Shown here piece after piece: positions 18,528 through 59,470 of a stretch of DNA of 64,000 nucleotides (the stretch's first letter is position 1; each line of letters opens with the position of its first letter). The notes below the pieces were generated by a model that worked only from the letters and a program-made list of their open reading frames with translations, searched no databases and had not been told where the DNA came from. The stretch lies in sequence record PP496440.1; one strand, written 5' to 3'. Both the position numbers and the translations under genes were made by a program.

Positions 18528-18589
18528 AGCGTATAGCAATCGAATGCGTGGAATTAGCCCTTAACGGCGTCCCCACTAGTGGAGAACAC

Positions 18590-20068
18590 ATGAAATCTGT
18601 AGCCGTTGACTACCAAAAGATAGCCAAGGAATGCCAGTGCACCGAGCTGCCTTCCAAGGTAAGAGTTACTCGTGCACGGGTCTATCCAAACTTGAGGACG
18701 TGCCTACTCTTCCTCAAGTACGATGCCAAAGGTGAACTGGTACAAGCCGAGATCACTGCGCCGTACGACACGTCCACTGAGCCAAAGGTGAGGGTGCTCA
18801 AACATCCTGACAAGAAGTCAGACTTCCTTTCATTATATAGGGCGCTGATCCGCCACCAGATCATACCCGAGTCTATTCCGAAGAAAGGTAACGGGATTGC
18901 ACCAACGCTGGAGGTCATCGGCACACTGGTTAGCCTGCTGCCGGAACGGGATGTCGAAACCTTCCGAACCCTTACCCCGGCCATCCAGACTGGCAGCGTT
19001 ATGTACGTCCCTCTGGTTACGTCCCGGCCAATGCCCATGGTGCAACACTGGATACCTGTTGACCAGCATTCAGAGCTGGGCATGATCGAGCTGGTCGATA
19101 CGGATAGCAAGCCTTTCCTGAATCAGTGGGTCAACAGGTTGAGCAACACCGCCACCGGTTATGTGATCTACACCCCGGAAGGCTCACACGGTCAGGAACT
19201 CGCCTGCTTCCGGGTGCCCAATGTACAAGGGGAGGAACTGTGTGTGGTCAAGAAGGTTGACTTCACCCTGACTGTTGCTCGCACACTCAAGCCGGTACTG
19301 ACTGTATCCACCAAGAGTACTCGGGCAGTGTCCCGCATTCCCCTACCCCACTATCTGATGCTGCGCAATCACCACATCAAGGTGGGCACGGTTATTTCCC
19401 TGCGTCGTAACGACCGAGGTGGGTTGGTGTACCATGAGACGGTGGCCGAGGAAGGCATGACGCCCCTGCCGCTGTGTCCACACTGCCACAGTGGTTCTGT
19501 GCTGCGAGGTAGTAGCAATGACGTGTACTGCAATAACGATTCATGCCGAGGCCTAGCCATCGTGCGACTTCGTTATGTCTTGAACAACAAGCTGGACGTC
19601 AAGTACCTGAGCGACAATAAGGTAACGGCGCTGATCAATGACAAGCAGGACCTGTTCAGCTTGCTTAAGACACCGACGCACCAGTTACGGCATAGACCTG
19701 GCTTTGGTGCACGTACCGTGGACGCACTGGAGGAGAAGCTTAACACTATTGCCGGTCTTCCACTGCACACACTGGCCGAGATGTCCTGCGCTTTCTACAA
19801 CGTGGGCGTGCCCCCACTGGATGAGATGGTGTTCAAGAAGATCTTTTCCGTTATGTCGATTGACTACCTGAAAGCGCTGCCGTCTACCGGCAAGATGTAC
19901 AGTCAGCTGCTCGACATCGAAGGTATCCGCAACAACCGCGCAGTGGCTTTCCTTGCTGGCTGGCCTGCATTTCAACAGTGGATGATAGACCTGAACGCTG
20001 CCCTACAGTCTCGCAGCGCAATCTCCACCACGGTAAATAGCCCAAAACAAATTCGAGGTGTTAAATGA
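18590..20068 (+). CDS. NAD+-dependent DNA ligase-like protein with degenerate catalytic motifs
   Basis: LigA architecture: NTase-like region, OB fold (IKVGTVISLRR), Zn finger CPHC...YCNNDSC, HhH (RPGFGART). The KxDG motif is replaced by NLRT, and there is no BRCT domain. Confidence 0.75.
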   Translation: MKSVAVDYQKIAKECQCTELPSKVRVTRARVYPNLRTCLLFLKYDAKGELVQAEITAPYDTSTEPKVRVLKHPDKKSDFLSLYRALIRHQIIPESIPKKGNGIAPTLEVIGTLVSLLPERDVETFRTLTPAIQTGSVMYVPLVTSRPMPMVQHWIPVDQHSELGMIELVDTDSKPFLNQWVNRLSNTATGYVIYTPEGSHGQELACFRVPNVQGEELCVVKKVDFTLTVARTLKPVLTVSTKSTRAVSRIPLPHYLMLRNHHIKVGTVISLRRNDRGGLVYHETVAEEGMTPLPLCPHCHSGSVLRGSSNDVYCNNDSCRGLAIVRLRYVLNNKLDVKYLSDNKVTALINDKQDLFSLLKTPTHQLRHRPGFGARTVDALEEKLNTIAGLPLHTLAEMSCAFYNVGVPPLDEMVFKKIFSVMSIDYLKALPSTGKMYSQLLDIEGIRNNRAVAFLAGWPAFQQWMIDLNAALQSRSAISTTVNSPKQIRGVK

Positions 20069-20829
20069 ACGTTCAAAACAGAACTCGTATCGCTGTGCTT
20101 GTCGGCGGCGGTCTGGACTCCCACGCCTACATGGTGTTGAAAGCCGACCAGCCACAGACGGACTTCATTCATGTGGACTACGGCCAGCGGGTTGCAGTAG
20201 CCGAGAGAAACGCCGTGTTGCAAATGGCTGAGAAGCTGGGCATTGCCCGCAGTCGCGTGTACACGCTGATCTGCAACAAGAAGAATCACATGCGCAAGGT
20301 CAATGACGGTGTGGGTGTGTTGTTTGGCACCGGCCCGGTCGAGATGGACAATGCGTTTGTTAAGGGGCGTAACCTGTTCCTGATTCAGAAGGCCATCGAG
20401 CTGGGCTACGGTCACGTGCACTTGACGCTGACCCAAGAGCGTGGCCGGATGTTCCCCGATGCCGATCTGGCATTCGTCCAGCTGGTTGACAACCTGATGC
20501 ACCGCAGTTATGACGTGAGGGTATCCGCCCCCTACATCATGGAAGACAAGCATCGGGTGATGTTCAAGGCGTATCGGCATTGCCCCGAGTTCCTCGATAT
20601 GTCTTTCACGTGCTGGGTAGGTCCTTATGTGGAATGTGGCACGTGCCCGCACTGCGTCAAGAAGGAAAAGATTCGAGCCGAGATGATCGTTGAGAAAGCC
20701 GACTACGATCTCAACAAGGATGAACGTGAGGCGCAGTGGAAGCAAGTCAAGGCAGGCTACGGCGACGCGTTGAAGCCCGCTGAGACCATCAACGCGACGG
20801 TATCTGTTGCTAAGGGGGAATTTAAATGA
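20065..20829 (+). CDS. queC: QueC-like PP-loop ATPase (paralogue 1)
   Basis: VLVGGGLDS, VDYGQR, FVKGRN, FPDAD and TCW...CGTCPHC Zn motif. Confidence 0.8.
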   Translation: MNVQNRTRIAVLVGGGLDSHAYMVLKADQPQTDFIHVDYGQRVAVAERNAVLQMAEKLGIARSRVYTLICNKKNHMRKVNDGVGVLFGTGPVEMDNAFVKGRNLFLIQKAIELGYGHVHLTLTQERGRMFPDADLAFVQLVDNLMHRSYDVRVSAPYIMEDKHRVMFKAYRHCPEFLDMSFTCWVGPYVECGTCPHCVKKEKIRAEMIVEKADYDLNKDEREAQWKQVKAGYGDALKPAETINATVSVAKGEFK

Positions 20830-21548
20830 ACAAGTTCTTAGGTTGGTTCAAGCGTCTGCTGGATAAGAAACAAAAGTCAGTCACGATGACGTTGACCGAC
20901 GCCGAAGGTAAGTTGGTCACCATTCACATACCGCAAGGTGCGGGTGTCGAATACACGCTCTCGAAGTCGGGCACCCACTTGAACATCTCAGTTAAAGACG
21001 ACGTGTTCATGTTGCGCACGAATGGCGCAGGAGGCAACGGAGGTGGCGGTGGCCGTGGAAGTTCCAAACCCGGTCTCAACGGTGGCCCCGGCCATACACC
21101 TATCCCCCGGTCCCCAAGCTTCACGGGCGCTGGTACGCCGAACTACGGTCACGCAGGCGACCCGCCTGTTGGTGCTCAAGCTTCGTTCCCTATCGGCGCC
21201 CGAGCAACTGTTTCTGGTGGTGGGCGCGTTGGTGGCCTGTCAGGTGGAAGCGCAAACGGCACAATGGCTGGTGGTGGAGATGGCTTAGTTCCCTCTCCAA
21301 TCCGTAGCTCTGATCGAGCTTACCTGATTAGAGGTTTGTATTACGTCATCACGACGAAGAAGATAACGGGAGAGCAATACCCGATCCATGAGCTTCTGCA
21401 TTGGGGTAAGAAGTCAATCGAACTCATGGGCAAGTTCTCCACCGTCCGAGACGCTATCGACGAACTCAAATTGAAGACGGGTATCCCATTCGAAGACCTG
21501 ACGGACTATCAGGTTGATTCCCTTCCCAAACGACTGTGCAAGCCTTGA
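20826..21548 (+). CDS. Glycine-rich protein
   Basis: 240 aa with a central G/P/S low-complexity tract; located between the two QueC paralogues. Confidence 0.7.
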   Translation: MNKFLGWFKRLLDKKQKSVTMTLTDAEGKLVTIHIPQGAGVEYTLSKSGTHLNISVKDDVFMLRTNGAGGNGGGGGRGSSKPGLNGGPGHTPIPRSPSFTGAGTPNYGHAGDPPVGAQASFPIGARATVSGGGRVGGLSGGSANGTMAGGGDGLVPSPIRSSDRAYLIRGLYYVITTKKITGEQYPIHELLHWGKKSIELMGKFSTVRDAIDELKLKTGIPFEDLTDYQVDSLPKRLCKP

Positions 21549-21586: not shown

Positions 21587-22405
21587 ATGACCACTGCGCC
21601 CCCAAAGATTATCGTTGCATTCAGCGCCGGTACAGATTCAACTACAGCGGCCTACTACTATCGCAAGCTCGGCTATCAGGTAACGCTGGCCGTGTTCGAT
21701 GACGGCGCATGCAACGATCCACTTGGCCCTCTGTACGATCCGAACAAGCCGAAGGACTTGACCAACTTCTCGGATGAGTTCTACGATTACGTACGGATTC
21801 ACCAAGAGCACACGGAAGGCCATCTTCAGTTCGACTTCGTGGAGATTCGTTATCCGCAACTCGCATTGCTGGAAGCCAACAAGACAGCCAAGCCCGGTCG
21901 GGACAATGCAGCAGCAGCAGAGGCTGACGGCTTGGGCTTCTGGGTCGGCTTCAAGGGCCTGATGGCAATGTTGCTGATGAGCCACGGCGCCGCCAATGGT
22001 TACGAGGCAGTAGTCTTCGGCCACATGCCGTACAACAACCATTACGAAGATGAGCTGCCCCAGAACTTCGAGCTGCTGCGTCAGTACATGGTTACGGCCT
22101 ATGGCAGCCGAGTGGAAATTCCTCAGATCTACCACCCATTCTATCGACCGAATTTCGATACCAAGGAAAAGGTTATTGAGCTGGCGCAGGCAATCGGCGT
22201 GCCCTTGCGAGATACCTATTCGTGCCGCCGAGGTGAAGTAGAAACCCGAGGTATCCTCCTGCCACTTCTGCGTGGCGGTAACTCCAACTACGTGAGCCCC
22301 ACCTACCGTTGGAAGCATTGTGGTACGTGTGAGAACTGTGTCGAACGCAAGCGAGCCTTCGCGGCGCTGGGCATGAAAGATCCTGCCCCTTATATGGAAC
22401 ATTGA
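21587..22405 (+). CDS. queC: QueC-like PP-loop ATPase (paralogue 2)
   Basis: VAFSAGTDS, TKEKVIELA..IGVPLRDTYSC, HCGTCENCVERKRAF. Confidence 0.8.
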   Translation: MTTAPPKIIVAFSAGTDSTTAAYYYRKLGYQVTLAVFDDGACNDPLGPLYDPNKPKDLTNFSDEFYDYVRIHQEHTEGHLQFDFVEIRYPQLALLEANKTAKPGRDNAAAAEADGLGFWVGFKGLMAMLLMSHGAANGYEAVVFGHMPYNNHYEDELPQNFELLRQYMVTAYGSRVEIPQIYHPFYRPNFDTKEKVIELAQAIGVPLRDTYSCRRGEVETRGILLPLLRGGNSNYVSPTYRWKHCGTCENCVERKRAFAALGMKDPAPYMEH

Positions 22406-22406
22406 T

Positions 22407-23423
22407 ATGGCCCTTTCAATCTGGCCGCTGACCGAAGGTGAACTCGGTCAGGGCCTCGTCAACGAACTGAATCGTACCAGCAAGGCGCTGGTGAACCGGA
22501 GTATGTGGTCTTTGCCATTGCTCCGGCGTTTGTTTTATCGGCGCACCGAGATTGGTGTCCCGGAGCTACTCCACGTCTGTACCAGCATTCATCGGGGCAA
22601 GACTTACTTCTGCCTGTTGGTGAACTTCCGAGATGTGGTGATGGGCAACCCCGAGCAATACGGATGGGACCTAGCTGGCCGGTGGTTGTTCTACGATGTG
22701 GATCTGCTGGATACCCCGGAGTTTAAACAGGTAAACGCGGCTATTCGTAAGGTGGCTACGGTCAACACGGTTACCTACGGTCAAGCATTCGTTCCGGATG
22801 AAGGTGGTATGGGGGAGGAGCACTGGATCAAGAAACTGAAAGGTAACTACCGCCCCCACATCTTCGGCGAAAAGTCAAAACAGGTTATCGTCAGTCAGAC
22901 CTGCGGACACGCGGCTACTCACGTTCTGACCGAGGCAGTGATGTCATTCGGTATCCAGCGCGCTGAGAGATTTCTCGCGGAAGGTCAGTCGGATGTCATG
23001 CCGGAGTTGTATGACCTACCCATGCAGCTAGCCGGTCTAGGCTCGATCCCTGGAACCCGGATTGGCACCGTGTCGCTCACCTGCCGGGATACCCGTGCGC
23101 TGATCGGTACCCTGTCGTTCTACGTTGTGGCAGGCTTGGGTCACAGTGATATCTTGTATATGCACGAGATGCTGATTGATCCGGATCCGAAGTGGAAGCC
23201 TCTATCGGTGGCCGTCAACTTGCACATTCAGGCAATCATGTATGTGCGCTATCTAAACAGCCGATCTGATCGGGCTTCGGACTTGGTTATCAACCTCGGA
23301 TTCAACTTGGACGAGAAGTACAACACATACAAAGAGGTGTTCCGTCCGAACAAGTCCGAAATGGAAATCTATACCGGCATGCACACCGAGCCCGGCGTCC
23401 CACTGTCCTGTTTCAAGGGGTAA
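22407..23423 (+). CDS. FemAB/GNAT-like transferase (paralogue 1)
   Basis: WIKKLKGNYR helix and C-terminal INLG...YKEVF, the pattern of FemAB/Acetyltransf_6-like proteins. Confidence 0.45.
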   Translation: MALSIWPLTEGELGQGLVNELNRTSKALVNRSMWSLPLLRRLFYRRTEIGVPELLHVCTSIHRGKTYFCLLVNFRDVVMGNPEQYGWDLAGRWLFYDVDLLDTPEFKQVNAAIRKVATVNTVTYGQAFVPDEGGMGEEHWIKKLKGNYRPHIFGEKSKQVIVSQTCGHAATHVLTEAVMSFGIQRAERFLAEGQSDVMPELYDLPMQLAGLGSIPGTRIGTVSLTCRDTRALIGTLSFYVVAGLGHSDILYMHEMLIDPDPKWKPLSVAVNLHIQAIMYVRYLNSRSDRASDLVINLGFNLDEKYNTYKEVFRPNKSEMEIYTGMHTEPGVPLSCFKG

Positions 23424-25568: not shown

Positions 25569-27653
25569 ATGAAATCCGTGAACCCCATCTTCAAGCACGT
25601 TCCCCAGTTCGACTGGCCTGTCATCCCGCGTGCACAGTGGGAAGAGATCATCAAAGGCAAAGAGCATGTGATGTTCGACTCCTTCTCGCAGCTCGCTCAG
25701 GTGCTGGCTATCCCGGTGAGCAGTTACCAGTTCTACTTCGAAGATGGGTCCACGTTGTTCGCCGGTCCCGAAGCAACCTTCACCGCCGCGCCGTACCCGC
25801 TGTATCAGGACCTTGAATTCGTCCTGACCCCTGACGAGACGTTGGTGCCGGGTCTTGCACTGGATACCAAACCGTGGGGCCTGTACACCGACGAATGGGT
25901 GGACAACTACGAAGGTGCGGACAAGGAAGACATCGGCAACAAGACCGGGTTCGAATTCATTCCGCTGTCGGACGCCTTGAAACTGGTGGTCCTCAACACG
26001 GAGACCATGCAGCTCCAGTACACTGCAATCGAGAGCTTCACGTACGACGGCGTGACTTACGTATACCTGCTGGCTGATGGCGTGTGCTGGGTACTGGCGG
26101 GCAAGTCAGGTGGTCTGGTTGCCAGCGAGCATGACAAAGGTGCGGCGTTCATCATGGTGTCCCATCCCGAGTTCGCCGGGTGCAGCGTAGACAACATGTA
26201 TCCAAGTGAGTTCGGTGAAGCGGAAGCGACGTTCTACGTTCAAGACGAGGAACACAACTACCTGGACGCGGCTAACCGCATCTTCGAAGAAGCCAAGGAC
26301 GTAGGCGCGGGCACATTCCTGACCATTGAGACCGGGGATGGACTGCCGACCGCGCTGGCGTACAACCTGCGGTACAGTGATGTGGCCCACGTTAACCTGC
26401 CGATGCACAACATCCACCAGTTCACTTCTCTGCACGTACGACTGGGTGAGACTCCTAACTTTTCCGAGGCCCCGGAAGCGTGCCGCATGAAAGAGGTTAT
26501 GGAGTATCTGGCGGACCCTGAGTCCCCGGTAGATCATTACTGGTCGGCCATCATGGTACTGGAGAAGAACTTCCCCGGTTTCGCCGACGCCCTGAAAGAC
26601 TCCAGTGTCCCGACCCGTGACATCGTGCACTCCAAACAGGCGTTCAGCTTGGAGATCGATCGCCAGTTCGGCAAGGAAGTGGCAAGCAAGATCGGGCTGA
26701 ACACTGGCGTATTCGCTCAAGTGAAAGACCGTGATGAATGGCTGGTACGCAAACACGAGTTCCCTACCGATAAGGTGGCCGTCAAGTACAACACCAAACA
26801 CTTCATCGGAATCTTCGATAAGGACGAGGTATCGAATTCCATCAACATGTGGCTGGCCGGTCAACCCGGAGAGTCGCTGATGATCGAAGAGTACTTCGGT
26901 GAGGGCAATCAGGAATTCAACCTGTGCTATGTGATCAACGAAGAGTTCGTGCAGCCGACGCTGTTCCTGTGCGAAGTCAACAAGATCCTAGGTAATGACA
27001 CCGGCGGCAAAGGTGGCAACACGCTGGCCTGCCATGATGCTCGTATTAACAAGTACCCTGAGTTCTTCGAGCCGGTCAATGCTGCGCTTGCTAACCTGCA
27101 TGAGCACGTGGAAGGTGTGAAGGGCTGGGTTGACCTGAGCTTCATGGTCCGCGACGGAATCCCTTACTTCACAGAGTGGTGCATTCGAATTGGCTGCTCC
27201 AACAACGCCACCATCGTGCGCCAGATGGAGACCCCGCTCGACGTTCTGCTGACCAACGTGGTTAACAAGGTGCATACCGAGCTGTCTTGGAAGCACTCCA
27301 TGTCTGTCAGCGTGGACATCTACAGCATGCCGCTGTCCGCAGGCAATGATGCCAACATGCAGTTCACCGAGTCGCTGACCACGCCGGTCGAGATGGTGTC
27401 CCCGCTCAATCTGGAACTGGCGGCGGAGAGTTTCTTCGACCCGATTGATTCGGCCTGGAACGCGGTGTACGACGGCTACATTGTCGAGGCGTACAACCGA
27501 TATGGCACCGTCTCGGGGTATTCCACCAACTGGAACTTCGCCTGCAATGCGGCGTACAATCACTTGAAAGATCAGTCGGTGTTGTACGGGGCATACCGCG
27601 AAGCGCCTGCCCACCACGACCCACTGACTCTGTTCCCTTTCCTCAAGGCGTAA
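25569..27653 (+). CDS. PurD/GARS-like ATP-grasp amide ligase with an N-terminal extension
   Basis: LEIDRQFGKEV, VAVKY, MIEEYF.E..EF, NDTGGKGGNT and DLSFMVRDGIPYFTEWCIRIG parallel the PurD ATP-grasp motifs. Confidence 0.75.
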   Translation: MKSVNPIFKHVPQFDWPVIPRAQWEEIIKGKEHVMFDSFSQLAQVLAIPVSSYQFYFEDGSTLFAGPEATFTAAPYPLYQDLEFVLTPDETLVPGLALDTKPWGLYTDEWVDNYEGADKEDIGNKTGFEFIPLSDALKLVVLNTETMQLQYTAIESFTYDGVTYVYLLADGVCWVLAGKSGGLVASEHDKGAAFIMVSHPEFAGCSVDNMYPSEFGEAEATFYVQDEEHNYLDAANRIFEEAKDVGAGTFLTIETGDGLPTALAYNLRYSDVAHVNLPMHNIHQFTSLHVRLGETPNFSEAPEACRMKEVMEYLADPESPVDHYWSAIMVLEKNFPGFADALKDSSVPTRDIVHSKQAFSLEIDRQFGKEVASKIGLNTGVFAQVKDRDEWLVRKHEFPTDKVAVKYNTKHFIGIFDKDEVSNSINMWLAGQPGESLMIEEYFGEGNQEFNLCYVINEEFVQPTLFLCEVNKILGNDTGGKGGNTLACHDARINKYPEFFEPVNAALANLHEHVEGVKGWVDLSFMVRDGIPYFTEWCIRIGCSNNATIVRQMETPLDVLLTNVVNKVHTELSWKHSMSVSVDIYSMPLSAGNDANMQFTESLTTPVEMVSPLNLELAAESFFDPIDSAWNAVYDGYIVEAYNRYGTVSGYSTNWNFACNAAYNHLKDQSVLYGAYREAPAHHDPLTLFPFLKA

Positions 27654-27656: not shown

Positions 27657-28820
27657 ATGAGCACTCCATTCCAAGAGTTCACCCTAGAAGGGTGGATTCG
27701 CTACATGAGAGATGAAAGCATCATCTGGCGCGCGTACGCTGATGGTCATCCGGATAAGGTCGAGTTCAGCCCGGAGTGGCGTGACGAGATGTATCGGTTG
27801 ATGGTGCAGTTCAAAGATCTGCTGCCGATGTCGTTTTCCAATCCGGTGTACGGCTTCACTGAAGGTTGGCTGGAAGGGCTCGGACTCCAGCCCTTTTATG
27901 GCGATGATCCGTTCAATCCGATGGTGCAACCGCTTAGCCACCCTCTGGTGCATGTGGGGCTTCCGTTTACTCTGAGCGAGCTGACGGCGGGCGTATGGGA
28001 CTGTCAGTCCCTGAGCGCTCACCTGGAGCGTCCGCTGCTGGTCGATACATTCGAACCGATCCCAGTGCCATCTATTAGCCTGGACGCTTACAAAGCCGTC
28101 CTGACCGTACGGGACCGGGAAGAGATCGTGATGAGTGCGGGAACCCCGGTGAACTACTTCCTCTGGTTGAATAGTCCGATCACCGAACTCAAAGACGACT
28201 TCGACGTTTATCTGGCCAGCCTGACCAAGAAGCGCCGCTACAAAGTGAAGCAGGCACTGGCGACAGTGGGCACCGAAGAGAACCCGGCTATCAGCGTCAG
28301 TACTGGATCTCGTTTCGGCGAAGGGTTGTTGTCCGATCAGGTGAACAGCATCCTCGCGACTTTCGAAGATCCGGTGGACATCGAGTGCATGCTTCTTCAG
28401 CTGCTGTTCGGGGTGGCAACCTGCAATACCCATCCGCATCTTGTCGATCTGGTTTGTGCAGACCATCAGTTGGGGATCTTCATCAGGCGCAACGGCCACA
28501 CGATGAATTTCCTCTACAACCGTGACCCGGACAACCGCGCTGACTCAGGCATCAACCTGCTGACCCAGTACGTGCGCCATCTGCACATGAACCGCCCGGA
28601 AGGTGTGATGTACGTGGACCCGACATGTCGATATCGGCCTGACGAGGACAGTATGAACACCTACAAGCGGGTGATCACCAACGAGAACCGGTATCACCCA
28701 ATGCCGTTCGTCTCGGCTGACCCTGCGCATATCGAAGGTGTGATTACCCCGGCGTTCATTGCAGGTCATTGGCAGATGTCGGCGTCCAATGGCCCGGCCA
28801 ATCCTGAGATGATGGAGTAA
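27657..28820 (+). CDS. FemAB/GNAT-like transferase (paralogue 4)
   Basis: FDVYLASLTKKRRYKVKQAL, a hallmark Acetyltransf_6/FemAB helix, and YVDP...TYKRV. Confidence 0.65.
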   Translation: MSTPFQEFTLEGWIRYMRDESIIWRAYADGHPDKVEFSPEWRDEMYRLMVQFKDLLPMSFSNPVYGFTEGWLEGLGLQPFYGDDPFNPMVQPLSHPLVHVGLPFTLSELTAGVWDCQSLSAHLERPLLVDTFEPIPVPSISLDAYKAVLTVRDREEIVMSAGTPVNYFLWLNSPITELKDDFDVYLASLTKKRRYKVKQALATVGTEENPAISVSTGSRFGEGLLSDQVNSILATFEDPVDIECMLLQLLFGVATCNTHPHLVDLVCADHQLGIFIRRNGHTMNFLYNRDPDNRADSGINLLTQYVRHLHMNRPEGVMYVDPTCRYRPDEDSMNTYKRVITNENRYHPMPFVSADPAHIEGVITPAFIAGHWQMSASNGPANPEMME

Positions 28821-28822
28821 CC

Positions 28823-29770
28823 ATGGCAAAGCACAAGGTCAAAAGGTTGGAAATCAACCACATCTACGACTTCTACCCGTTGTATCAGGTGATGTACGGG
28901 CGTGGCATGGAGACCAAAGCGTTCGAGGTCTCCAAGTTCGCCAAGATGGTGCTGGACTTCGAAGCATCAACCAGTACTCGCCGGAAGTGGGACGTGCTGG
29001 AACCTTTCAGCGGTATCAGCGAGCATGAACACTTCTTCGCTGCTACTGGCCTGAACATCGAGCACTACACCGGCATGGACATCGTGGTTCCAGATGGGGC
29101 CAAAAACGTCATTCAAGGTGACATCATCACCGACACCCTTCCGTTTCACGTCAACGCGGTGTTCGCCTTCTACTACAGCTTGCAGAATGTACGGGACGCC
29201 AAGACTGGCATGCACACGCGGGAAAAGCTGGTGGAGTTCTTCGACAACATCCTCGGCCATCTGCAAGTCAATGCGAACAAGAGCCGTATGCCCGCAGTGT
29301 TCGCTTTCCACCTTGACCAGCCTGAAGACCCTAATTACTATCTGACGTCCCGTGCCGACGTTGGAGGTGAACAGTCATGGACCGCACCCGCGTGTGGTCT
29401 GCTGGGGCAGTGGGTCAAGTGCAAGCCTACTGATACTCTGGAAGTGAAGTGCAATCTGGACACCTGGTACAACCGTGTGCAGTGCACCGCGTACGATCAG
29501 GCGGAGGATATCCAGATTCTGGTAAATGGGCGAGTAGTGGCTACCGTTGAGATCGAACAGCCGTTCACCCATCGGGTCTGGACCGAGCATGAGGTGATCG
29601 ATATCCTGCGGGGTCTGGACTACAATCTGCACTTCCACATGTACAACGGCACCATCTCCAATTACGACTTCTTGATGACCCGTTTGGAAGACAAGCCCGT
29701 TCCCGGCGATGAAGAGGCTAATACTAATCAGATGACAACTGATATGCTGGTTGTCGTTAATCCGAGGTAA
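28823..29770 (+). CDS. Class I SAM-dependent methyltransferase-like protein (paralogue 1)
   Basis: VLEPFSG, YTGMDI, IQGDI and VNAVFAFYYSL. Confidence 0.65.
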   Translation: MAKHKVKRLEINHIYDFYPLYQVMYGRGMETKAFEVSKFAKMVLDFEASTSTRRKWDVLEPFSGISEHEHFFAATGLNIEHYTGMDIVVPDGAKNVIQGDIITDTLPFHVNAVFAFYYSLQNVRDAKTGMHTREKLVEFFDNILGHLQVNANKSRMPAVFAFHLDQPEDPNYYLTSRADVGGEQSWTAPACGLLGQWVKCKPTDTLEVKCNLDTWYNRVQCTAYDQAEDIQILVNGRVVATVEIEQPFTHRVWTEHEVIDILRGLDYNLHFHMYNGTISNYDFLMTRLEDKPVPGDEEANTNQMTTDMLVVVNPR

Positions 29771-29772
29771 GA

Positions 29773-30690
29773 ATGGCTAAGCCCAAGATCCCTACACGAA
29801 CCATCCCCACGTTGTACCAAGACTGGGGATTGTACAGCGCCATCTGCGAACTGCCGCAGGAGACGATGCTGATGATGTCGCGCTTCGTGGCAGACCGGAC
29901 TATAGAGCATGCTAATAGGCATGACATAGATCGTGTGTCGATCATGGAACCTTTCAGTGGTCCTATCCCGTATTACGAACCTGATATCGACAGTTTCCTT
30001 ACTAGAGCTGGCATAGGTTTAGACACGTATGATCATGTGGAATACCTAGATCACGGTGAGCTGACCAAAAAGAACAATATCATCATCGGGGACATCACCA
30101 CCATAGATCTTAAGCAAAAGTACGATGTCATCTACGGTAGTTACGGTAGCTTGGCCTGCCTGTTGCTGGATCAGACGCATAACAAAGCGTACGAGAAATC
30201 TCACGCGGCGTTGGTCAACATTCGCGAGCACCTGAAACCCGGCGGCATCTTCGTGCTAAACGCCAATGGGTCAAGCGAGAGTCTGCTGAATAACCTGTTG
30301 AACTCTGATGAGCCGGATCAAGAGATTCGCGTCCGTCCGGGATCGCAGTTAGGTAAGGCGTTCCGAATCAAACCAGACAGTAACGCGCTGCTTCGCTTCA
30401 CCTATCATGTGGAGTACGACCGGCGCACCACCTGCACCATGTGCCACTACAGCGATATGGTGCTGTCTGTAAATGGAGTTGACATCCAGCGCTGGGAGGT
30501 GGAATCCCCGACGTATCTTGCGCCGCTGGATGAACCCGAACTAATTCGAATGGCAGGTATGGCTGGTTTCAATCTGGACAACACTGAGTTCTACGGATTG
30601 GACACCACCGGTTATCCTGCCTTCTTCAAAATGGATACGGTCTGCGACGGGTCATGGTCACCCGCCGAGTTCGTAGTCTTTCGCACCTAA
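29773..30690 (+). CDS. Class I SAM-dependent methyltransferase-like protein (paralogue 2)
   Basis: IMEPFSG, IIGDITTIDLKQKYDVI and HLKPGGIFVL. Confidence 0.8.
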   Translation: MAKPKIPTRTIPTLYQDWGLYSAICELPQETMLMMSRFVADRTIEHANRHDIDRVSIMEPFSGPIPYYEPDIDSFLTRAGIGLDTYDHVEYLDHGELTKKNNIIIGDITTIDLKQKYDVIYGSYGSLACLLLDQTHNKAYEKSHAALVNIREHLKPGGIFVLNANGSSESLLNNLLNSDEPDQEIRVRPGSQLGKAFRIKPDSNALLRFTYHVEYDRRTTCTMCHYSDMVLSVNGVDIQRWEVESPTYLAPLDEPELIRMAGMAGFNLDNTEFYGLDTTGYPAFFKMDTVCDGSWSPAEFVVFRT

Positions 30691-30700
30691 CGAGGTTCCT

Positions 30701-31906
30701 ATGAGCGTTATCATCCCCACCGTAGCGATGGAGAGTGGTCAGCCAGACATGATCATTCCGGGTTGTGCGACACCTACCCCGGTCAAGTCTTCCAAGAAGC
30801 TGTACGAACGTGAAGACTTGATGGCGTACGACAGCGAGTCGGAGCATTGGCAGAAGCAGCTGGCCCGCCGCTACGCTCACCATGGTGAGATGGTCGGTGT
30901 GTTGAACAACGTCGAGGTGGTGCCGGAAGCCACCTATCAGAACTTCGACATGAAGATCACCCCGTACACCGCGCAGTTGATGGACCAGAACGACCCCAAC
31001 TGCCCGATCCGTCTGCAGTACATGCCGACCAACAAAGAGCTGGAGTCGATTCAGCGTGAAGAGACCATGCACAACGAGCTGGGCGAGGAAGAGGACACCA
31101 TCCCCGGTACCTCGGTCGTGCACCGCTACCCGCGTCGCGTCTTGTTCCTGACCACTACCCAATGCGCCAGCTTCTGCCGTTACTGCACCCGTGCACGCAT
31201 CGTCTCCCACGGCGGCGAAGCGGCGATCACCAAGAAGCACCTTGACGCCAGCATCGACTACATCGCTGGGAACAAGGACATCGAAGACGTGCTGCTGTCC
31301 GGCGGTGACCCGTTCATCCTGCCAGACAACAAGCTCGACGAGATTCTCGGTCGTATCCGCGCCGAGGCACCTCACGTTCGCTTCCTGCGTATCGGTAGCC
31401 GACTGCCGGTACAGATGCCGACCCGTATCACTCCAGAGCTGTGCGAGATTCTGGAACGCCACAACGTCAACATGGTCAACATCCATGTGAACCATCCGAA
31501 AGAAGTGACCCCTCTGCTGGCCTCCCGGATGAAGATGTTGCGCAAAGCGGGAGTCATGCTGGGCAATCAGGCGGTCCTGCTGAAAGGCGTGAACGACTCC
31601 ATCGAGGTGATGACCGAGCTGTGCTTGCGCATGGTCGAGATGGGTGTGCGTCCGTACTACGTCTACTCCAACGATCCGGTGGCCCAGGCCGCACACTTCA
31701 CCGTGTCGCTGAAAGAGATGCTGAATATCAACGAGGGTATGCGTGGCTTCCTGTCTGGCCCGGCTATGCCAACCTTCGTGGTAGACGGCGTGGGTGGCTT
31801 GGGCAAGATGCCGGTGCAGAAAGAGTACGTCGGCTTCGATAAGAACGGCGGTATCTTCGCCCAGAACTTCGAAGGGAAAACGGCCCGCATGCCCCATCTG
31901 GAATAA
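30701..31906 (+). CDS. kamA: Lysine 2,3-aminomutase family radical SAM/PLP enzyme (KamA/EpmB)
   Basis: HRYP.RVL, CASFCRYCTR (CxxxCxxC), LSGGDP, RIGSR.P..P.RIT, NQ.VLLKGVND, PYY, and GGLGK (PLP lysine). Confidence 0.95.
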   Translation: MSVIIPTVAMESGQPDMIIPGCATPTPVKSSKKLYEREDLMAYDSESEHWQKQLARRYAHHGEMVGVLNNVEVVPEATYQNFDMKITPYTAQLMDQNDPNCPIRLQYMPTNKELESIQREETMHNELGEEEDTIPGTSVVHRYPRRVLFLTTTQCASFCRYCTRARIVSHGGEAAITKKHLDASIDYIAGNKDIEDVLLSGGDPFILPDNKLDEILGRIRAEAPHVRFLRIGSRLPVQMPTRITPELCEILERHNVNMVNIHVNHPKEVTPLLASRMKMLRKAGVMLGNQAVLLKGVNDSIEVMTELCLRMVEMGVRPYYVYSNDPVAQAAHFTVSLKEMLNINEGMRGFLSGPAMPTFVVDGVGGLGKMPVQKEYVGFDKNGGIFAQNFEGKTARMPHLE

Positions 31907-55789: not shown

Positions 55790-56761
55790 ATGAAAGATAT
55801 GCGCTATACCGAACTGTTCTATTCCCTCCAAGGTGAGGGGTTGCGCGTTGGGGTGCCTTCGGTATTCTTCCGCATGTTCGGTTGCAACTTCGAGTGCAAG
55901 GGATTCTCCAATCCTGAAATGAAAGATCCCAACGTGATCCCGGCCATCAATCTGCTGGCGATCAACGACGCCGATCTGGAACTGGGCTGTGACTCTCGTT
56001 ACAGCTGGCACAAGGACTATCGCAACCTGGCCATCAAAGCTGCTCCCCATGAGGTGGCCAACACTTTGATCGACTTCACGAAAGAGAAGCACTTGGCGGC
56101 GGTGGCTCGCTGGCCCAAGCGCAATCGAGCAGGTAATGTCGTCCGCTTGATCCCCGGACTTCCTATAGATGGAGTCCTTCAGATTGCTACGCTGGCGCAC
56201 ATACCAGACTGGGTGTTCACCGGCGGCGAACCGTTCATGCAGCAAGAGCAGCTGGAAGGTCTGCTGCGTCACGCCATGTACGTTGTGGAAGAGGAGGACG
56301 TTAACTTTGGCCTGCTTGGCCTGCCGATGCTGACTTTCGAGACCAACGCCAGTATTTCGATGAGAGACTCCATGCTGGATTGTCTCAAAGATTACAACGA
56401 TGGCTTCGGCGACGTGCACTTCTCTAACAGCCCCAAGCTGTCATTCACGGGAGAGCATCGCAACGCGGCTCTGAAGCCCTACGTTATCGAGCAACAATGC
56501 TCTATCGGGGGCTCCAGTTCGTTCAAATTCGTGGTGCGCCCTGCTCGCGAAGACTTCGATGAGCTGATGGAGTTCATGCAAGAGTATCAACCCTACATGG
56601 ATGAAGGTAGTATCGAGAACATATACGTCATGCCGGTCGGCGCCAGCTTGCACCAGCAACAAGCCATCGCCACGCAGGTTGCGGAGCTGGCACTGGAATA
56701 CGGACTGTCCTACAGCCCACGGCTCCAGTGTGACCTGTGGGCCAACAAGATAGGGACGTAA
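55790..56761 (+). CDS. queE: 7-carboxy-7-deazaguanine synthase (radical SAM)
   Basis: ELFYSLQGEG...PSVFFRMFGCNFEC...CDS, VFTGGEPF, FETN, SPKL, FKFVV, and PRLQ. Confidence 0.9.
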   Translation: MKDMRYTELFYSLQGEGLRVGVPSVFFRMFGCNFECKGFSNPEMKDPNVIPAINLLAINDADLELGCDSRYSWHKDYRNLAIKAAPHEVANTLIDFTKEKHLAAVARWPKRNRAGNVVRLIPGLPIDGVLQIATLAHIPDWVFTGGEPFMQQEQLEGLLRHAMYVVEEEDVNFGLLGLPMLTFETNASISMRDSMLDCLKDYNDGFGDVHFSNSPKLSFTGEHRNAALKPYVIEQQCSIGGSSSFKFVVRPAREDFDELMEFMQEYQPYMDEGSIENIYVMPVGASLHQQQAIATQVAELALEYGLSYSPRLQCDLWANKIGT

Positions 56762-58729: not shown

Positions 58730-59470
58730 ATGGCTATTGATGCACATAAGTATCCGTTGTTGGCGGCGGCTCAAGACCGACTCATCGAGTCTGGTCAGCG
58801 CTATTTTGCGAATGACAATATCCATCCGGTATTTGAATACCTGGACAACATGGCATTGCCTATGCCAGTCGGGGCTCAGACACTGGAGCAGATGAAGGAG
58901 GCTGTTCAAGAGAAGTACGGCGAGCTGCTGGAACTCCTCTTGATCGATTGGGCTGCGGATCATAACTCCGAAGGTACCCCGCGCCGTGTCGCCAAGATGC
59001 TGGTAGAGGAAACCTACAAGGGTCGCTATCAGCCGACGCCGAAGATCACCGCGTTCCCCAACGACAGCAAGCGTACCCAGATGATCGTGATCGGGCCGCT
59101 GCGCGTTGAGAGCCAGTGCAGCCATCACCATCAGAACATCCGGGGATGGGCATGGGTCGGTGTTATGCCGTCGGAAGATGGTACACTGATCGGTCTGTCG
59201 AAGTTCAGCCGCCTACTTGATCATATCTGCCGCCGTCCTCAGATCCAAGAGGAAATGGTTGCTCAGGTGTGTCACCAGTTGAACGATCTGGTCAAGGACA
59301 ACCTCGGTGTCGCGGTCGTGATCAACGCAGAGCACCAGTGCATGGCCGTTCGGGGCGTGCAAGAGCCGTGTGCCCAAACCGTTACGTCGGAGATGCTGGG
59401 TGCGTTCCTCGAACCTGGTGTTCGTCAGGAGTTCCTGACCTACGTGCAAATGAACCCAGCTCCATGCTAA
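58730..59470 (+). CDS. folE: GTP cyclohydrolase I
   Basis: TPRRVAKM, SQCSHH, IGLSKF.R....RRPQIQE, and AEHQCM..RGV. Confidence 0.95.
   Translation: MAIDAHKYPLLAAAQDRLIESGQRYFANDNIHPVFEYLDNMALPMPVGAQTLEQMKEAVQEKYGELLELLLIDWAADHNSEGTPRRVAKMLVEETYKGRYQPTPKITAFPNDSKRTQMIVIGPLRVESQCSHHHQNIRGWAWVGVMPSEDGTLIGLSKFSRLLDHICRRPQIQEEMVAQVCHQLNDLVKDNLGVAVVINAEHQCMAVRGVQEPCAQTVTSEMLGAFLEPGVRQEFLTYVQMNPAPC

What the first reader, a model, noticed from the sequence alone, without database searches (positions are those of the whole stretch)
30701..31906. Phage lysine 2,3-aminomutase retains the residues for a basic amino-acid substrate
Seen in sequence: CxxxCxxC followed by Arg, the PLP Lys in GGLGK, and Asp in both YSND and VVDG. 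Established: these two aspartates bind the lysine side chain in clostridial KamA and are replaced in glutamate 2,3-aminomutase. The C-terminal Zn-Cys cluster is absent, and no epmA or efp is in the window. Inference: it makes beta-lysine (or beta-arginine) for the adjacent ligases, an unusual function for a phage.
Basis: partly seen in the sequence, partly recalled or inferred. Interest (0 to 1): 0.7.

Follow-up and report, generated by a model that had tools for sequence, protein, structure and literature searches.

The report
Phage beta-lysine enzyme in deazaguanine cluster
A 200-kb Pseudomonas putida phage carries an intact lysine 2,3-aminomutase, always beside a rare amino-acid ligase and next to 7-deazaguanine genes, so the phage probably uses beta-lysine to build an undescribed decoration on its DNA bases.

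Summary
Window 30701-31906 (+) encodes a 401-aa KamA-family radical-SAM/PLP enzyme (KoPa5_00198 of Pseudomonas phage vB_PpuM-KoPa-5, deposited as "hypothetical"). All catalytic and lysine-binding residues of clostridial KamA are present.

Its nearest relatives are 59-68% identical short proteobacterial enzymes. One of them sits in a canonical lysine-degradation operon (kamA-kdd-kamDE-kce). The whole clade lacks the zinc cysteines, so that absence is not a phage peculiarity.

No EpmA or EF-P exists anywhere in the 201-kb genome.

The new point is context. In at least 10 diverged phage loci, KamA travels with a rare PurD-like ATP-grasp ligase. CelD/FemAB-like proteins, amine-type SAM methyltransferases and QueC-like PP-loop enzymes often accompany them. 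One relative adds beta-lysine 5,6-aminomutase (KamDE).

KoPa-5 also encodes FolE, QueD-like and QueE-like proteins and an unannotated DpdA-like transglycosylase.

Best reading: KamA makes beta-lysine, which is ligated into a tailored 7-deazaguanine DNA hypermodification. The enzyme identity is well supported. The DNA destination is inferred and needs nucleoside mass spectrometry.

The parts
30701..31906 (+). KamA-family radical SAM/PLP enzyme (g12, KoPa5_00198), predicted L-lysine 2,3-aminomutase. It has the CxxxCxxC cluster, R164, SGGD, D325, D362 and the PLP lysine K369.
25569..27653 (+). g8: 694-aa PurD-like ATP-grasp ligase. Residues ~248-694 form a complete GAR-synthetase fold; residues 1-245 are an extra N-terminal domain. 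It is the conserved partner of KamA.
   Evidence: The family profile hits only PurD structures (best 8.8e-21). ESM-Atlas structural TM is 0.82. The family is rare: 31 representatives at E<1e-10 in 1.8 billion proteins. It co-occurs with KamA.
27657..28820 (+). g9: 387-aa protein. CelD/BioF2/FemAB-like GNAT is a lead only (motif KKRRYKVKQAL). Homologues are present in most related loci.
   Evidence: ESM-Atlas features 0.94 to Acetyltransf_6/FemAB clusters. Family defined by jackhmmer. No Pfam or PDB hit. The AF2 model was unusable.
28823..29770 (+). g10: class I SAM-dependent methyltransferase-like protein, paralogue of g11.
   Evidence: The family profile hits SAM methyltransferase 1WZN (2.8e-5) and the N,N-dimethyltransferase 3BXO (9e-5). 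Motif I (LEPFSG / LELFCGAGS) is seen. Family.
29773..30690 (+). g11: class I SAM-dependent methyltransferase-like protein, paralogue of g10.
20065..20829 (+). g2: QueC-like PP-loop ATP pyrophosphatase. The PP-loop GGGLDS and the four-Cys zinc motif are kept, but it scores below the QueC equivalog cut-off.
   Evidence: Pfam QueC 68.6 bits. TIGR00364 61.9 against 150.3. Sequence. Orthologue in L023.
21587..22405 (+). g4: second, more divergent QueC-like PP-loop enzyme. It lies next to g5 here and also in L019 and L023.
   Evidence: Pfam QueC 47 bits. TIGR00364 23.7 bits..
22407..23423 (+). g5: 338-aa protein of unknown fold, conserved as the downstream neighbour of the g4-type QueC-like gene.
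   Evidence: Homologues L019:7567-8502 and L023:5470-6483. No Pfam or PDB hit.
20826..21548 (+). g3: 240-aa glycine-rich protein in the same gene string; function unknown, found only in this phage genus.
23427..25535 (+). g6 (23427-24428) and g7 (24483-25535): orphan proteins of 333 and 350 aa, co-oriented within the string; function unknown. g6 carries an RRRSVLKAKE motif resembling that of g9.
   Evidence: AF2 of g7 failed.
55790..56761 (+). QueE-like radical SAM protein (KoPa5_00231), part of the phage's 7-deazaguanine precursor pathway.
   Evidence: Record annotation. Pfam Fer4_12. 6e-68 to the GR7B radical SAM protein.
58730..59470 (+). GTP cyclohydrolase I (FolE), first step of 7-deazaguanine synthesis.
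   Evidence: Pfam GTP_cyclohydroI 134 bits. 2.8e-65 to GR7B FolE.
18548..20068 (+). g1: 506-aa protein with a partial NAD-ligase-like segment. It is the first gene of the co-oriented string and is probably a boundary gene rather than part of the module.
   Evidence: NCBIfam LigA 1e-6, residues 309-409. Homologue of the gene annotated 'DNA ligase' in GR11A.

Best explanation
KoPa5_00198 is a working L-lysine 2,3-aminomutase of the short, zinc-less proteobacterial type. During infection it converts free L-lysine to beta-lysine (3,6-diaminohexanoate).

Beta-lysine is not an end product. It feeds a conserved phage module.
- A PurD-like ATP-grasp ligase (g8) activates an amino-acid carboxylate and joins it to an amine.
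- QueC-like PP-loop enzymes (g2, g4) can adenylate a carboxyl group and form an amide.
- CelD/FemAB-like proteins (g9, perhaps g5 and g6) and two amine-type SAM methyltransferases (g10, g11) tailor the remaining amino groups.

The phage also encodes FolE, QueD-like and QueE-like proteins and a DpdA-like guanine transglycosylase. The most likely scaffold is therefore a 7-deazaguanine base, for example the carboxyl of 7-carboxy-7-deazaguanine or the nitrile of preQ0. That base would be inserted in phage DNA, giving a cationic, amino-acid-decorated 7-deazaguanine that shields the genome from host nucleases.

Shown here: enzyme family, active-site residues, orthology-level similarity to catabolic LAM, conserved gene linkage, and presence of the deazaguanine and transglycosylase genes.

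Inferred: activity, order of steps, which enzyme joins what, and that the product ends up in DNA.

My sub-confidences:
- LAM activity on lysine: ~0.85.
- Beta-lysine consumed by the g8 module: ~0.7.
- Product is a DNA 7-deazaguanine hypermodification: ~0.45.
For: Enzyme identity:
- 2A5H match 2e-79 with every cluster, SAM, PLP and lysine-binding residue kept.
- These residues are invariant in 6 phage and 118 cellular homologues.
- 59-68% identity to cellular KamA-family proteins.
- The Rhodoferax orthologue (60%) lies in kamA-kdd-x-kamD-kamE-thioesterase-kce. It gives the same NCBIfam score profile as the phage protein.
- Purifying selection: dN/dS 0.16.

Free lysine as substrate: phage-like locus L019 has QueC - g5-like - KamA - GNAT - g8 - x - KamD - KamE.

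Module linkage:
- g8 and KamA occur together in KoPa-5, GR7B, GR11A, L011, L013, L014, L019, L022, L023 and L024.
- g8 is PurD-like, and its ATP-grasp core residues are invariant in 28 sequences.
- g8-g12 are separated by only 2-10 nt.
- The gene order is kept, with dN/dS 0.06-0.26, across the genus.

Deazaguanine link:
- Two QueC or QueC-like genes sit directly upstream in KoPa-5, GR7B/GR11A, L023 and L024, and one in L019 and L022.
- FolE is adjacent in L023 and L024.
- KoPa-5 has FolE, QueE-like and QueD-like genes.
- KoPa5_00103 carries DSGGFQ and CNCPVC...HN. Together with its L023 homologue, which lies inside the KamA gene string, it hits archaeosine tRNA-guanine transglycosylase 1IQ8 at 9.9e-6.
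- The Vibrio phages and L024 carry an ArcS-like DUF5591 protein next to QueC.

Chemical precedents:
- ArcS transfers L-lysine onto preQ0 (PMC11298593).
- A phage asparagine-synthetase-like AMP-forming ligase, CmoY, joins glycine to a DNA-borne carboxyl (PMC12783734).
- The g10/g11 profile hits SAM methyltransferases including an N,N-dimethyltransferase.
Against: - No biochemical or mass-spectrometric data exist. No sequencing run was listed that could show modification signals.
- Neither KoPa-5 QueC-like protein reaches the QueC equivalog cut-off (62 and 24 bits against 150), so even preQ0 synthesis is uncertain.
- Loci L011, L013 and L014 show KamA+g8 without a visible QueC gene, though these contigs are only 10-18 kb. 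L011 and L013 instead carry a GFO/IDH/MocA oxidoreductase, which hints at sugar chemistry.
- In KoPa-5 the DpdA-like gene, QueD-like gene and FolE/QueE lie far from the KamA string.
- Several of these phages share synteny with topoisomerase II, so part of the co-occurrence reflects common descent rather than independent association.
- g9 as a FemAB-like protein rests on language-model features and a motif only. Both structure predictions failed.
- The host is an aerobe and clostridial LAM is oxygen-labile. QueE and E. coli EpmB, however, work in aerobes (established knowledge).
Confidence: 0.5

Rival explanations
1. Beta-lysine is made and ligated by the ATP-grasp/GNAT/methyltransferase module into a product that is not a DNA base. 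Candidates are a small cationic metabolite or short beta-peptide (DNA-packaging counter-ion, osmolyte like N-acetyl-beta-lysine, or an inhibitor of a host defence), or a modification of a phage or host protein. Under this reading the QueC-like genes are merely neighbours or serve as generic amide ligases.
For: - L011, L013 and L014 have KamA+g8 without a visible QueC gene.
- L011 and L013 carry a GFO/IDH/MocA oxidoreductase and a weak glycosyltransferase match.
- Small GNAT acetyltransferases sit next to KamA in GR7B, GR11A and L019, as in the AblA/AblB pair.
- The KoPa-5 QueC-like proteins are below the QueC cut-off.
- Hutinet 2019 regarded singleton phage QueC-like proteins as another PP-loop subfamily.
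Against: - QueC or QueC-like genes are immediate neighbours in six lineages, with FolE and a TGT-like gene in the same string in L023.
- The module always lies among DNA-replication genes such as ligase, helicase and topoisomerase II.
- No transporter, NRPS or precursor-peptide gene is evident.
Confidence: 0.25
2. The KamA homologue does not act on free lysine. It acts on a lysine already tethered by its epsilon-amino group to a 7-deazaguanine (a preQ0-Lys-type adduct made by an ArcS-like or QueC-like enzyme). It would migrate the alpha-amino group in situ, or serve as a functional stand-in for the radical SAM partner of ArcS (RaSEA).
For: - ArcS makes preQ0-Lys, and a radical SAM enzyme then processes it.
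- ArcS-like DUF5591 proteins lie two to five genes from KamA in GR7B, GR11A and L024.
- LAM holds its substrate by the alpha-amino and alpha-carboxylate end, which would remain free in such an adduct (established knowledge of 2A5H; inference).
Against: - 60% identity with a catabolic LAM, and invariant D293/D330 equivalents that bind a free epsilon-ammonium.
- L019 pairs KamA with KamDE, whose known substrate is free beta-lysine.
- KoPa-5 has no detectable ArcS-like protein.
Confidence: 0.1
3. The enzyme uses another amino acid (arginine, giving beta-arginine as BlsG does, or glutamate).
For: The NCBIfam arginine and glutamate 2,3-aminomutase models score almost as high as the lysine model (292 and 303 against 313 bits, all below cut-off). 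Two aspartates could also accommodate a guanidinium group (inference).
Against: - The aspartates that glutamate 2,3-aminomutase replaces are kept (the replacement itself is established knowledge, Ruzicka & Frey 2007).
- The kam-operon control enzyme gives the same score profile.
- KamDE is linked in L019.
Confidence: 0.07
4. It is an EpmB-like enzyme that supplies (R)-beta-lysine for modification of elongation factor P, or a plain auxiliary metabolic gene that degrades host lysine.
For: E. coli EpmB is a recognisable homologue (1.5e-46). The cellular orthologues are catabolic.
Against: - No EpmA or EF-P homologue in the 201-kb genome.
- EpmB model 226 bits against a cut-off of 369.
- EpmB has E at the D330 position and F at T133.
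- Pseudomonas EF-P is arginine-rhamnosylated rather than beta-lysylated (established knowledge, not tested here).
- No kdd or kce gene in any phage locus.
- Strict linkage to a ligase module.
Confidence: 0.03

Closest known systems
Clostridium subterminale lysine 2,3-aminomutase KamA (PDB 2A5H)
   Same: Radical SAM plus PLP architecture. CxxxCxxC, R134, SGGD, D293, D330 and K337 equivalents are all present. 270 bits over ~310 residues.
   Different: The phage protein lacks the C-terminal domain and all four zinc ligands (C268 is Ser; no Cys in the 32-residue tail). It has a ~40-residue N-terminal extension. It sits in a ligase and deazaguanine cluster instead of a fermentation operon.
Short proteobacterial KamA of the lysine-degradation operon (e.g. 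Rhodoferax P0085, locus L008)
   Same: 60% identity, the same length class (~393 aa), the same zinc-less architecture and the same NCBIfam score profile. This is the most likely source of the phage gene.
   Different: The cellular gene is followed by kdd, kamDE and kce for catabolism. The phage gene is followed or preceded by ATP-grasp, GNAT-like, methyltransferase and QueC-like genes. Only L019 keeps kamDE.
EpmB/EpmA/EF-P beta-lysylation system
   Same: A KamA-family enzyme makes beta-lysine that a dedicated ligase attaches to a macromolecule.
   Different: No EpmA or EF-P in the phage. The EpmB model is below cut-off. The ligase here is PurD-like, not a class II lysyl-tRNA-synthetase paralogue.
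AblA/AblB (N-epsilon-acetyl-beta-lysine osmolyte synthesis)
   Same: LAM is paired with a GNAT acetyltransferase. GR7B, GR11A and L019 have a small GNAT next to KamA. AblA is the top NCBIfam model.
   Different: The score is far below the AblA cut-off (313 against 525). KoPa-5 has no small GNAT in the string. The extra ATP-grasp, methyltransferase and QueC-like genes have no counterpart.
ArcS-RaSEA archaeosine pathway
   Same: Lysine is covalently joined to a 7-deazaguanine (preQ0) and a radical SAM enzyme belongs to the system. ArcS-like DUF5591 proteins occur in the Vibrio phage versions and in L024.
   Different: There the lysine is a transient amino donor on tRNA, and the radical SAM enzyme is not a KamA-family aminomutase. 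KoPa-5 lacks a detectable ArcS-like gene.
Phage 7-deazaguanine DNA modification systems (DpdA with FolE/QueD/QueE/QueC; dPreQ0, dADG, dG+, dPreQ1, mdPreQ1, fdPreQ1, dCDG, dDG)
   Same: KoPa-5 has FolE, QueD-like, QueE-like, QueC-like and a TGT/DpdA-like enzyme.
   Different: None of the described systems includes an aminomutase, a PurD-like ligase or FemAB-like proteins (no hit in the literature searches). The QueC paralogues here are divergent.
CmoA/CmoX/CmoY carboxymethylcytosine-glycine hypermodification (Synechococcus phage S-B43)
   Same: A carboxyl group on a DNA base serves as a handle for an AMP-forming amide ligase that adds an amino acid. Asparagine synthetase, the homologue named there, belongs to the PP-loop class on my own knowledge, which would make this a mechanistic model for the QueC-like enzymes acting on a 7-carboxy group.
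   Different: A different base (cytosine C5), a different ligase family member, glycine instead of a diamino acid, and no dedicated amino-acid-making enzyme.
Phage M6 gp53 radical SAM glycinylthymine isomerase
   Same: In the papers read here, the only described radical SAM enzyme that helps install a phage DNA hypermodification.
   Different: It is spore-photoproduct-lyase-like, not KamA-like, and acts on DNA-bound glycine. I first recalled it as KamA-like, and the paper corrected that.

Membership tests
KamA family radical SAM/PLP aminomutases (TIGR00238) | Profile score above the curated subfamily cut-off | tested here: met
   275.1 bits against a cut-off of 199.2
KamA family radical SAM/PLP aminomutases (TIGR00238) | CxxxCxxC [4Fe-4S] motif, SGGD SAM-binding motif and the PLP-binding lysine | tested here: met
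   C155/C159/C162, S200-D203 and K369 aligned to 2A5H. Invariant in 124 sequences.
L-lysine 2,3-aminomutase (EC 5.4.3.2; KamA/AblA) | Residues binding the lysine carboxylate (R134) and epsilon-ammonium (D293, D330) | tested here: met
   R164, D325 and D362
L-lysine 2,3-aminomutase (EC 5.4.3.2; KamA/AblA) | Equivalog-level profile score (TIGR03820) | tested here: not met
   312.9 bits against 525.4. The kam-operon enzyme P0085 also fails, with 320.6, so the model does not cover this clade.
L-lysine 2,3-aminomutase (EC 5.4.3.2; KamA/AblA) | Structural zinc site (C268 plus C-terminal Cys cluster) of the clostridial enzyme | tested here: not met
   Ser300 and no Cys in the tail. The same holds for all 118 cellular clade members, which have S/D/N/G/A.
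L-lysine 2,3-aminomutase (EC 5.4.3.2; KamA/AblA) | Genomic link to enzymes that use beta-lysine | tested here: met
   Cellular orthologue in kamA-kdd-kamDE-kce. Phage locus L019 carries KamDE behind the module. KoPa-5 itself has only the ligase module.
L-lysine 2,3-aminomutase (EC 5.4.3.2; KamA/AblA) | Conversion of L-lysine to beta-lysine in vitro | not testable with these tools
   Requires anaerobic reconstitution
EpmB (EF-P beta-lysylation) | Equivalog score and presence of EpmA and EF-P partners | tested here: not met
   225.6 bits against 369.3. No EpmA or EF-P homologue in the genome.
Glutamate 2,3-aminomutase | Replacement of the two lysine-binding aspartates; equivalog score | tested here: not met
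   Both Asp are retained. 303.3 bits against 650.
Arginine 2,3-aminomutase (BlsG type) | Equivalog score | tested here: not met
   292.5 bits against 600
Phage 7-deazaguanine DNA modification system | GTP cyclohydrolase I (FolE) | tested here: met
   Window 58730-59470, Pfam 134 bits
Phage 7-deazaguanine DNA modification system | QueD and QueE | tested here: inconclusive
   QueD-like PTPS 34.2 bits against 22.4, in a 400-aa protein outside the window. QueE-like: only Fer4_12 plus the PHROG-based record name.
Phage 7-deazaguanine DNA modification system | QueC (preQ0 synthase) | tested here: inconclusive
   g2 61.9 and g4 23.7 bits against a cut-off of 150.3. PP-loop and Zn-Cys motifs are kept. 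GR7B has one true QueC at 185 bits.
Phage 7-deazaguanine DNA modification system | DpdA/TGT-family guanine transglycosylase | tested here: met
   KoPa5_00103 (record 80008-81378, outside the window) has DSGGFQ and CNCPVC..HN. Its profile hits ArcTGT 1IQ8 at 9.9e-6 over both motifs. The L023 homologue has a Pfam TGT match at 6.4e-4. DNA rather than tRNA as substrate is inferred.
Phage 7-deazaguanine DNA modification system | A 7-deazaguanine nucleoside in virion DNA | not testable with these tools
   No sequencing run was listed. Needs LC-MS/MS.
PurD-type ATP-grasp ligases (for g8) | Full N/A/C-domain fold and conserved ATP-grasp core residues | tested here: met
   The profile hits only PurD structures, 8.8e-21. 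TM 0.82. E362, R365, K406, E536 and R540 are invariant in 28 sequences. It is not PurD itself: TIGR00877 28 bits against 288.

The most novel reading that the evidence does not exclude
KoPa-5-like, GR7B-like and related uncultured phages replace or decorate guanine in their DNA with a 7-deazaguanine. Its 7-substituent would be an amide or amidine-linked beta-lysine (3,5-diaminohexanoate in the L019 lineage). That side chain would be further extended, acylated and N-methylated by a PurD-like ligase, CelD/FemAB-like transferases and amine methyltransferases.

This would be the first amino-acid-conjugated purine hypermodification in DNA. It would also be the first case of a virus encoding a radical SAM aminomutase to make a non-proteinogenic building block for its genome.
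Probability: 0.38. Interest if true: 0.88.

Novelty: new variant of a known kind. Interest (0 to 1): 0.72.

Why it matters
If the reading is right, this enlarges the chemistry known for phage DNA. Every described 7-deazaguanine modification carries a small one-carbon substituent. All amino-acid-bearing hypermodifications described so far are on pyrimidines.

A beta-amino-acid side chain on a purine, built by a multi-enzyme tailoring line, would be a new anti-restriction strategy. It would also be a new substrate class for modification-dependent nucleases and glycosylases.

It would assign functions to three groups:
- a rare PurD-like ligase family, with about 30 representatives in 1.8 billion proteins;
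- divergent "QueC-like" phage proteins that earlier surveys set aside;
- several orphan families.

The hypothesis is directly testable, because the phages and their laboratory host (P. putida PaW85/KT2440) are in culture.

Even in the conservative reading, it is a clear case of a phage capturing a catabolic radical SAM enzyme and rewiring it for biosynthesis.

Tried and rejected
- AlphaFold2 of g9 with a 5-sequence alignment (mean pLDDT 39.6) and of g7 alone (33.3). Both were unusable, so no fold searches were run.
- IMG/VR scans with KamA alone and with the g8 alignment found nothing. Only the 6-sequence KamA alignment worked.
- No sequencing run was listed for the region.
- The promoter/terminator scan gave counts at chance level.
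- Pairwise hhalign among the orphan families (g3, g5, g6, g7, v116 and others) found only QueC~g2.
- Pfam, PHROGs and NCBIfam found nothing for g3, g5, g6, g7 or g9. PDB profile searches found nothing for g9 or g5.
- g5 and g7 have homologues only inside the genus in the phage collection, and for g7 also in the 5.8-billion-protein set.
- I suspected the 408-aa gene between QueE and FolE to be DpdA. It looks like a beta sliding clamp instead.
- I recalled phage M6 gp53 as KamA-like. The paper shows it is spore-photoproduct-lyase-like.
- The KamA tree did not give a well-supported single phage clade, so I draw no conclusion about the number of acquisitions. The tree lacks AblA, BlsG, glutamate-aminomutase and clostridial KamA sequences because none was available as a stored sequence.
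- Literature searches for a phage KamA or beta-lysine DNA modification found nothing.
Full report
**Origin of the window.**
The window is the last 64 kb (record 137089-201088) of Pseudomonas phage vB_PpuM-KoPa-5 (PP496440.1). This is a 201-kb myovirus of P. putida PaW85/KT2440 and one of nine closely related "G3 jumbo" phages. The finding corresponds to KoPa5_00198, deposited as "hypothetical protein".

**The observation.**
- ORF 30701-31906 (+) encodes 401 aa. It has a GAGG ribosome-binding site, and the preceding gene stops 10 nt upstream.
- Pfam finds Radical_SAM, Fer4_12 and the LAM_C domain.
- NCBIfam places the protein in the KamA subfamily (275 bits, cut-off 199). It stays below every equivalog cut-off: AblA 313/525, glutamate 2,3-aminomutase 303/650, arginine 2,3-aminomutase 292/600, EpmB 226/369.
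- The only solved structure matched is C. subterminale lysine 2,3-aminomutase 2A5H (2e-79). In that alignment the following are kept: the three cluster cysteines, R134, SGGD, D293, D330 and the PLP lysine K337.
- The zinc ligand C268 is serine, and the protein ends 32 residues after the PLP lysine without any cysteine.

**What kind of KamA it is.**
- The nearest proteins in 5.8 billion sequences, outside the phage genus, are 59-68% identical "KamA family" proteins of about 393 aa. They come from Burkholderiales (Rhodoferax, Aquabacterium, Dechloromonas, Ideonella) and Lysobacter.
- The Rhodoferax protein (60%) is the first gene of a textbook lysine-degradation operon: KamA, 3,5-diaminohexanoate dehydrogenase, an unknown gene, beta-lysine 5,6-aminomutase alpha and B12-binding beta subunits, a thioesterase, and the 3-keto-5-aminohexanoate cleavage enzyme.
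- That control protein gives almost the same NCBIfam score profile as the phage protein. Failure to reach equivalog cut-offs is therefore a property of this clade, not evidence against lysine 2,3-aminomutase function.
- In an alignment of 6 phage and 118 cellular members, all catalytic and substrate-binding positions are invariant. None has the clostridial zinc cysteines.
- E. coli EpmB differs at two of these positions (F for T133, E for D330) and is much more distant.
- No homologue of EpmA or EF-P exists in the six-frame translation of the whole phage genome.
- The gene is under purifying selection: dN/dS 0.16 against phage Peetri.
- A quick maximum-likelihood tree interleaves phage and cellular sequences with weak support. 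I do not interpret it further.

**The neighbourhood.**
KamA is the last gene of a tightly packed, co-oriented string, g1-g12, at window 18548-31906. The gaps from g8 to g12 are 2-10 nt. Order and reading frames are conserved in the most divergent genus member, with dN/dS 0.06-0.26.

- g2 and g4 are QueC-like PP-loop enzymes. Their PP-loop and zinc-cysteine motifs are intact, but their scores fall below the QueC cut-off.
- g8 (694 aa) is a PurD-like ATP-grasp ligase.
  - A 28-sequence family profile hits only glycinamide-ribonucleotide synthetase structures (8.8e-21).
  - The Atlas model of residues 248-694 superposes on PurD with TM 0.82.
  - The ATP-grasp core residues are invariant.
  - The first ~245 residues are an additional domain.
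- g10 and g11 are paralogous class I SAM methyltransferases. Their profile hits the SAM-dependent methyltransferase 1WZN (2.8e-5) and the N,N-dimethyltransferase 3BXO (9e-5), with weaker rows for other N-methyltransferases.
- g9 resembles CelD/BioF2/FemAB-type GNAT proteins by language-model features and a basic motif. That remains a lead, because the structure prediction failed.
- g3, g5, g6 and g7 have no recognisable family.

**Conservation of the module elsewhere.**
- The g8 family is very rare: 31 representatives at E<1e-10 among 1.84 billion cluster representatives.
- Wherever enough flanking DNA was available, g8 sits beside a KamA gene. The loci are:
  - Vibrio phages GR7B and GR11A;
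  - metagenomic phage-like contigs L011, L013, L014 and L019;
  - IMG/VR contigs L022, L023 and L024, of 118-210 kb.
- Family clustering gives these counts among the ten loci with a KamA gene:
  - g9-like proteins in seven (plus L020, a short contig holding g8 and a g9-like fragment);
  - g10/g11-type methyltransferases in five;
  - QueC or QueC-like genes in seven, with two paralogues in KoPa-5, GR7B, GR11A, L023 and L024;
  - the g4-type QueC plus g5 pair in KoPa-5, L019 and L023;
  - a small GNAT next to KamA in GR7B, GR11A and L019.
- Most telling is L019. Its order is QueC, g5-like, KamA, GNAT, g8, an unknown gene, then beta-lysine 5,6-aminomutase alpha and beta subunits. A phage that carries both aminomutases of the lysine pathway, but neither the dehydrogenase nor the cleavage enzyme, is evidently making a diamino acid (beta-lysine, then 3,5-diaminohexanoate) as a building block from free lysine.

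**Link to 7-deazaguanine.**
- GR7B has a true QueC (185 bits), a second QueC-like protein and an ArcS-like DUF5591 protein with a PCxxxKPY motif directly upstream of the module. FolE, a QueD-like protein and a radical SAM protein lie elsewhere in its genome.
- KoPa-5 has homologues of all three:
  - FolE at window 58730-59470 (Pfam 134 bits);
  - a QueE-like radical SAM protein at 55790-56761;
  - a QueD-like PTPS protein outside the window.
- In L023 the string reads: FolE, DUF7487, a 482-aa protein with a weak Pfam TGT match, QueC, an unknown gene, QueC, g5-like, g8-like, an unknown gene, g8-like, KamA.
- The KoPa-5 homologue of that 482-aa protein is KoPa5_00103 (record 80008-81378, annotated hypothetical; phmmer 2e-50).
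  - It carries the transglycosylase hallmark DSGGFQ, the zinc motif CNCPVC...HN and a lysine-rich tail.
  - The two-sequence profile hits archaeosine tRNA-guanine transglycosylase 1IQ8 (9.9e-6) across both motifs.
- The phage thus has the hallmarks of a 7-deazaguanine DNA-modifying phage as described by Hutinet et al. 2019.
- Neither that survey nor the 2023 follow-up mentions an aminomutase, lysine or an ATP-grasp enzyme. Ten literature searches found no description of a phage KamA module.

**Mechanistic proposal.**
Shown here:
- a lysine 2,3-aminomutase with an intact active site;
- a conserved PurD-type ligase;
- PP-loop amide-forming enzymes;
- amine-type methyltransferases;
- a deazaguanine precursor pathway and a guanine transglycosylase.

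Inferred steps:
1. KamA supplies beta-lysine.
2. Beta-lysine is joined to a 7-deazaguanine in one of two ways. One is a QueC-like enzyme that adenylates the 7-carboxyl of CDG and uses an amino group of beta-lysine instead of ammonia. The other is addition to the nitrile of preQ0, as ArcS does with lysine.
3. The PurD-like ligase uses the amino-acid carboxylate for a further amide bond.
4. GNAT-like proteins and methyltransferases cap the remaining amines.
5. The DpdA-like enzyme places the base in DNA, before or after tailoring.

Two precedents support the chemistry. ArcS transfers L-lysine to preQ0 base derivatives (PMC11298593). The phage ligase CmoY, an asparagine-synthetase homologue and AMP-forming ligase, couples glycine to a carboxyl group on DNA cytosine (PMC12783734).

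A weak circumstantial hint comes from the isolators. They obtained extremely low DNA yields from the G3 jumbo phages with a standard phage DNA kit.

**Limits.**
- Nothing here demonstrates activity or a modified base.
- Three short contigs show the KamA-g8 pair without QueC, and two of them carry sugar-type oxidoreductases. A non-DNA product is therefore a serious rival (0.25).
- Several loci share topoisomerase II synteny, so co-occurrence is partly inheritance.
- The folds of g5, g6, g7 and g9 remain unknown.

**Verdict.**
The enzyme call is solid and ordinary in itself: a new member of the lysine 2,3-aminomutases. Its recruitment into a conserved phage ligase and tailoring module tied to 7-deazaguanine genes is new and directly testable.

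Noticed in passing
PP496440.1 record 80008-81378 (-), outside the window (L004:30008-31378): KoPa5_00103, annotated hypothetical, is a TGT/DpdA-family transglycosylase. It has DSGGFQ, CNCPVC..HN and a Lys-rich C-terminal tail, and its profile hits ArcTGT 1IQ8 at 9.9e-6. This makes KoPa-5 a likely 7-deazaguanine DNA phage, which the isolation preprint does not mention (its text holds none of the words QueC, queuosine or deazaguanine).
   Followed up: yes
window 30626-31933 (-): A 435-aa open frame runs antisense across the whole KamA gene. All homology is on the + strand, so this is a shadow ORF of a GC-rich coding region.
   Followed up: partly
window 57105-58331 (+): The 408-aa hypothetical protein between the QueE-like gene and FolE looks like a beta sliding clamp by Atlas features (0.95, clusters with DNA_pol3_beta domains). 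It is not a deazaguanine enzyme.
   Followed up: partly
window 20826-21548 (+): g3 is a 240-aa protein whose middle ~100 residues are glycine/proline/serine-rich low complexity. It has the highest divergence in the string (76% identity to Peetri). No homologue was found outside the genus.
   Followed up: no
L019 (Logan SRR29134027 contig, 30.6 kb), 13090-15377 and 16908-22120: A phage-like contig encodes B12-dependent beta-lysine 5,6-aminomutase subunits KamD and KamE next to KamA and g8. Its topoisomerase II genes are interrupted by intein/Hint domains.
   Followed up: partly
L025-L078 (IMG/VR): Another 54 viral contigs carry KamA relatives (30-41% identical) without the g8, QueC or KamDE genes. 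Neighbours shared by 8-10 of these loci include a SET-domain protein, a C5 DNA methyltransferase and unknown small proteins. There may be other, unexplored uses of KamA-family enzymes in viruses.
   Followed up: partly
PP496440.1 record 24947-26044, 40595-41194, 45973-47061 (outside the window): A 365-aa thymidylate-synthase homologue with insertions (it passes TIGR03284), a dNMP phosphatase and a MazG/dUTPase-like NTP pyrophosphohydrolase. These suggest nucleotide-pool editing. Whether a pyrimidine is also modified was not examined.
   Followed up: partly
window 36681-37373 (+): A 230-aa protein with an N-terminal J domain (DnaJ-like, 1e-8) lies between topoisomerase II and a polynucleotide-kinase-like gene. 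GR7B also encodes a DnaJ-like protein.
   Followed up: no
window 12046-12870 (-): A 274-aa GNAT acetyltransferase on the opposite strand, 18 kb upstream of KamA. It is weakly similar (3e-5) to a protein near the module in L022. A link to the module is possible but unsupported.
   Followed up: no
L002 (GR7B) 5040-6047; L012 5232-6194; L024 4539-5702: ArcS-like DUF5591 proteins of only 320-390 aa stand at the head of the QueC/KamA string in the Vibrio phages and one IMG/VR contig. No TGT or PUA domain was reported for them in the scans made. Their substrate, lysine or beta-lysine, would be worth testing.
   Followed up: partly
bioRxiv 10.1101/2024.03.26.586772, methods: The isolators report extremely low DNA yield from the G3 jumbo phages with a standard phage DNA kit and had to change columns. 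They also report more than 1000-fold protection of the wild-type host by its prophages. Both would fit unusual DNA chemistry, but neither is specific evidence.
   Followed up: no
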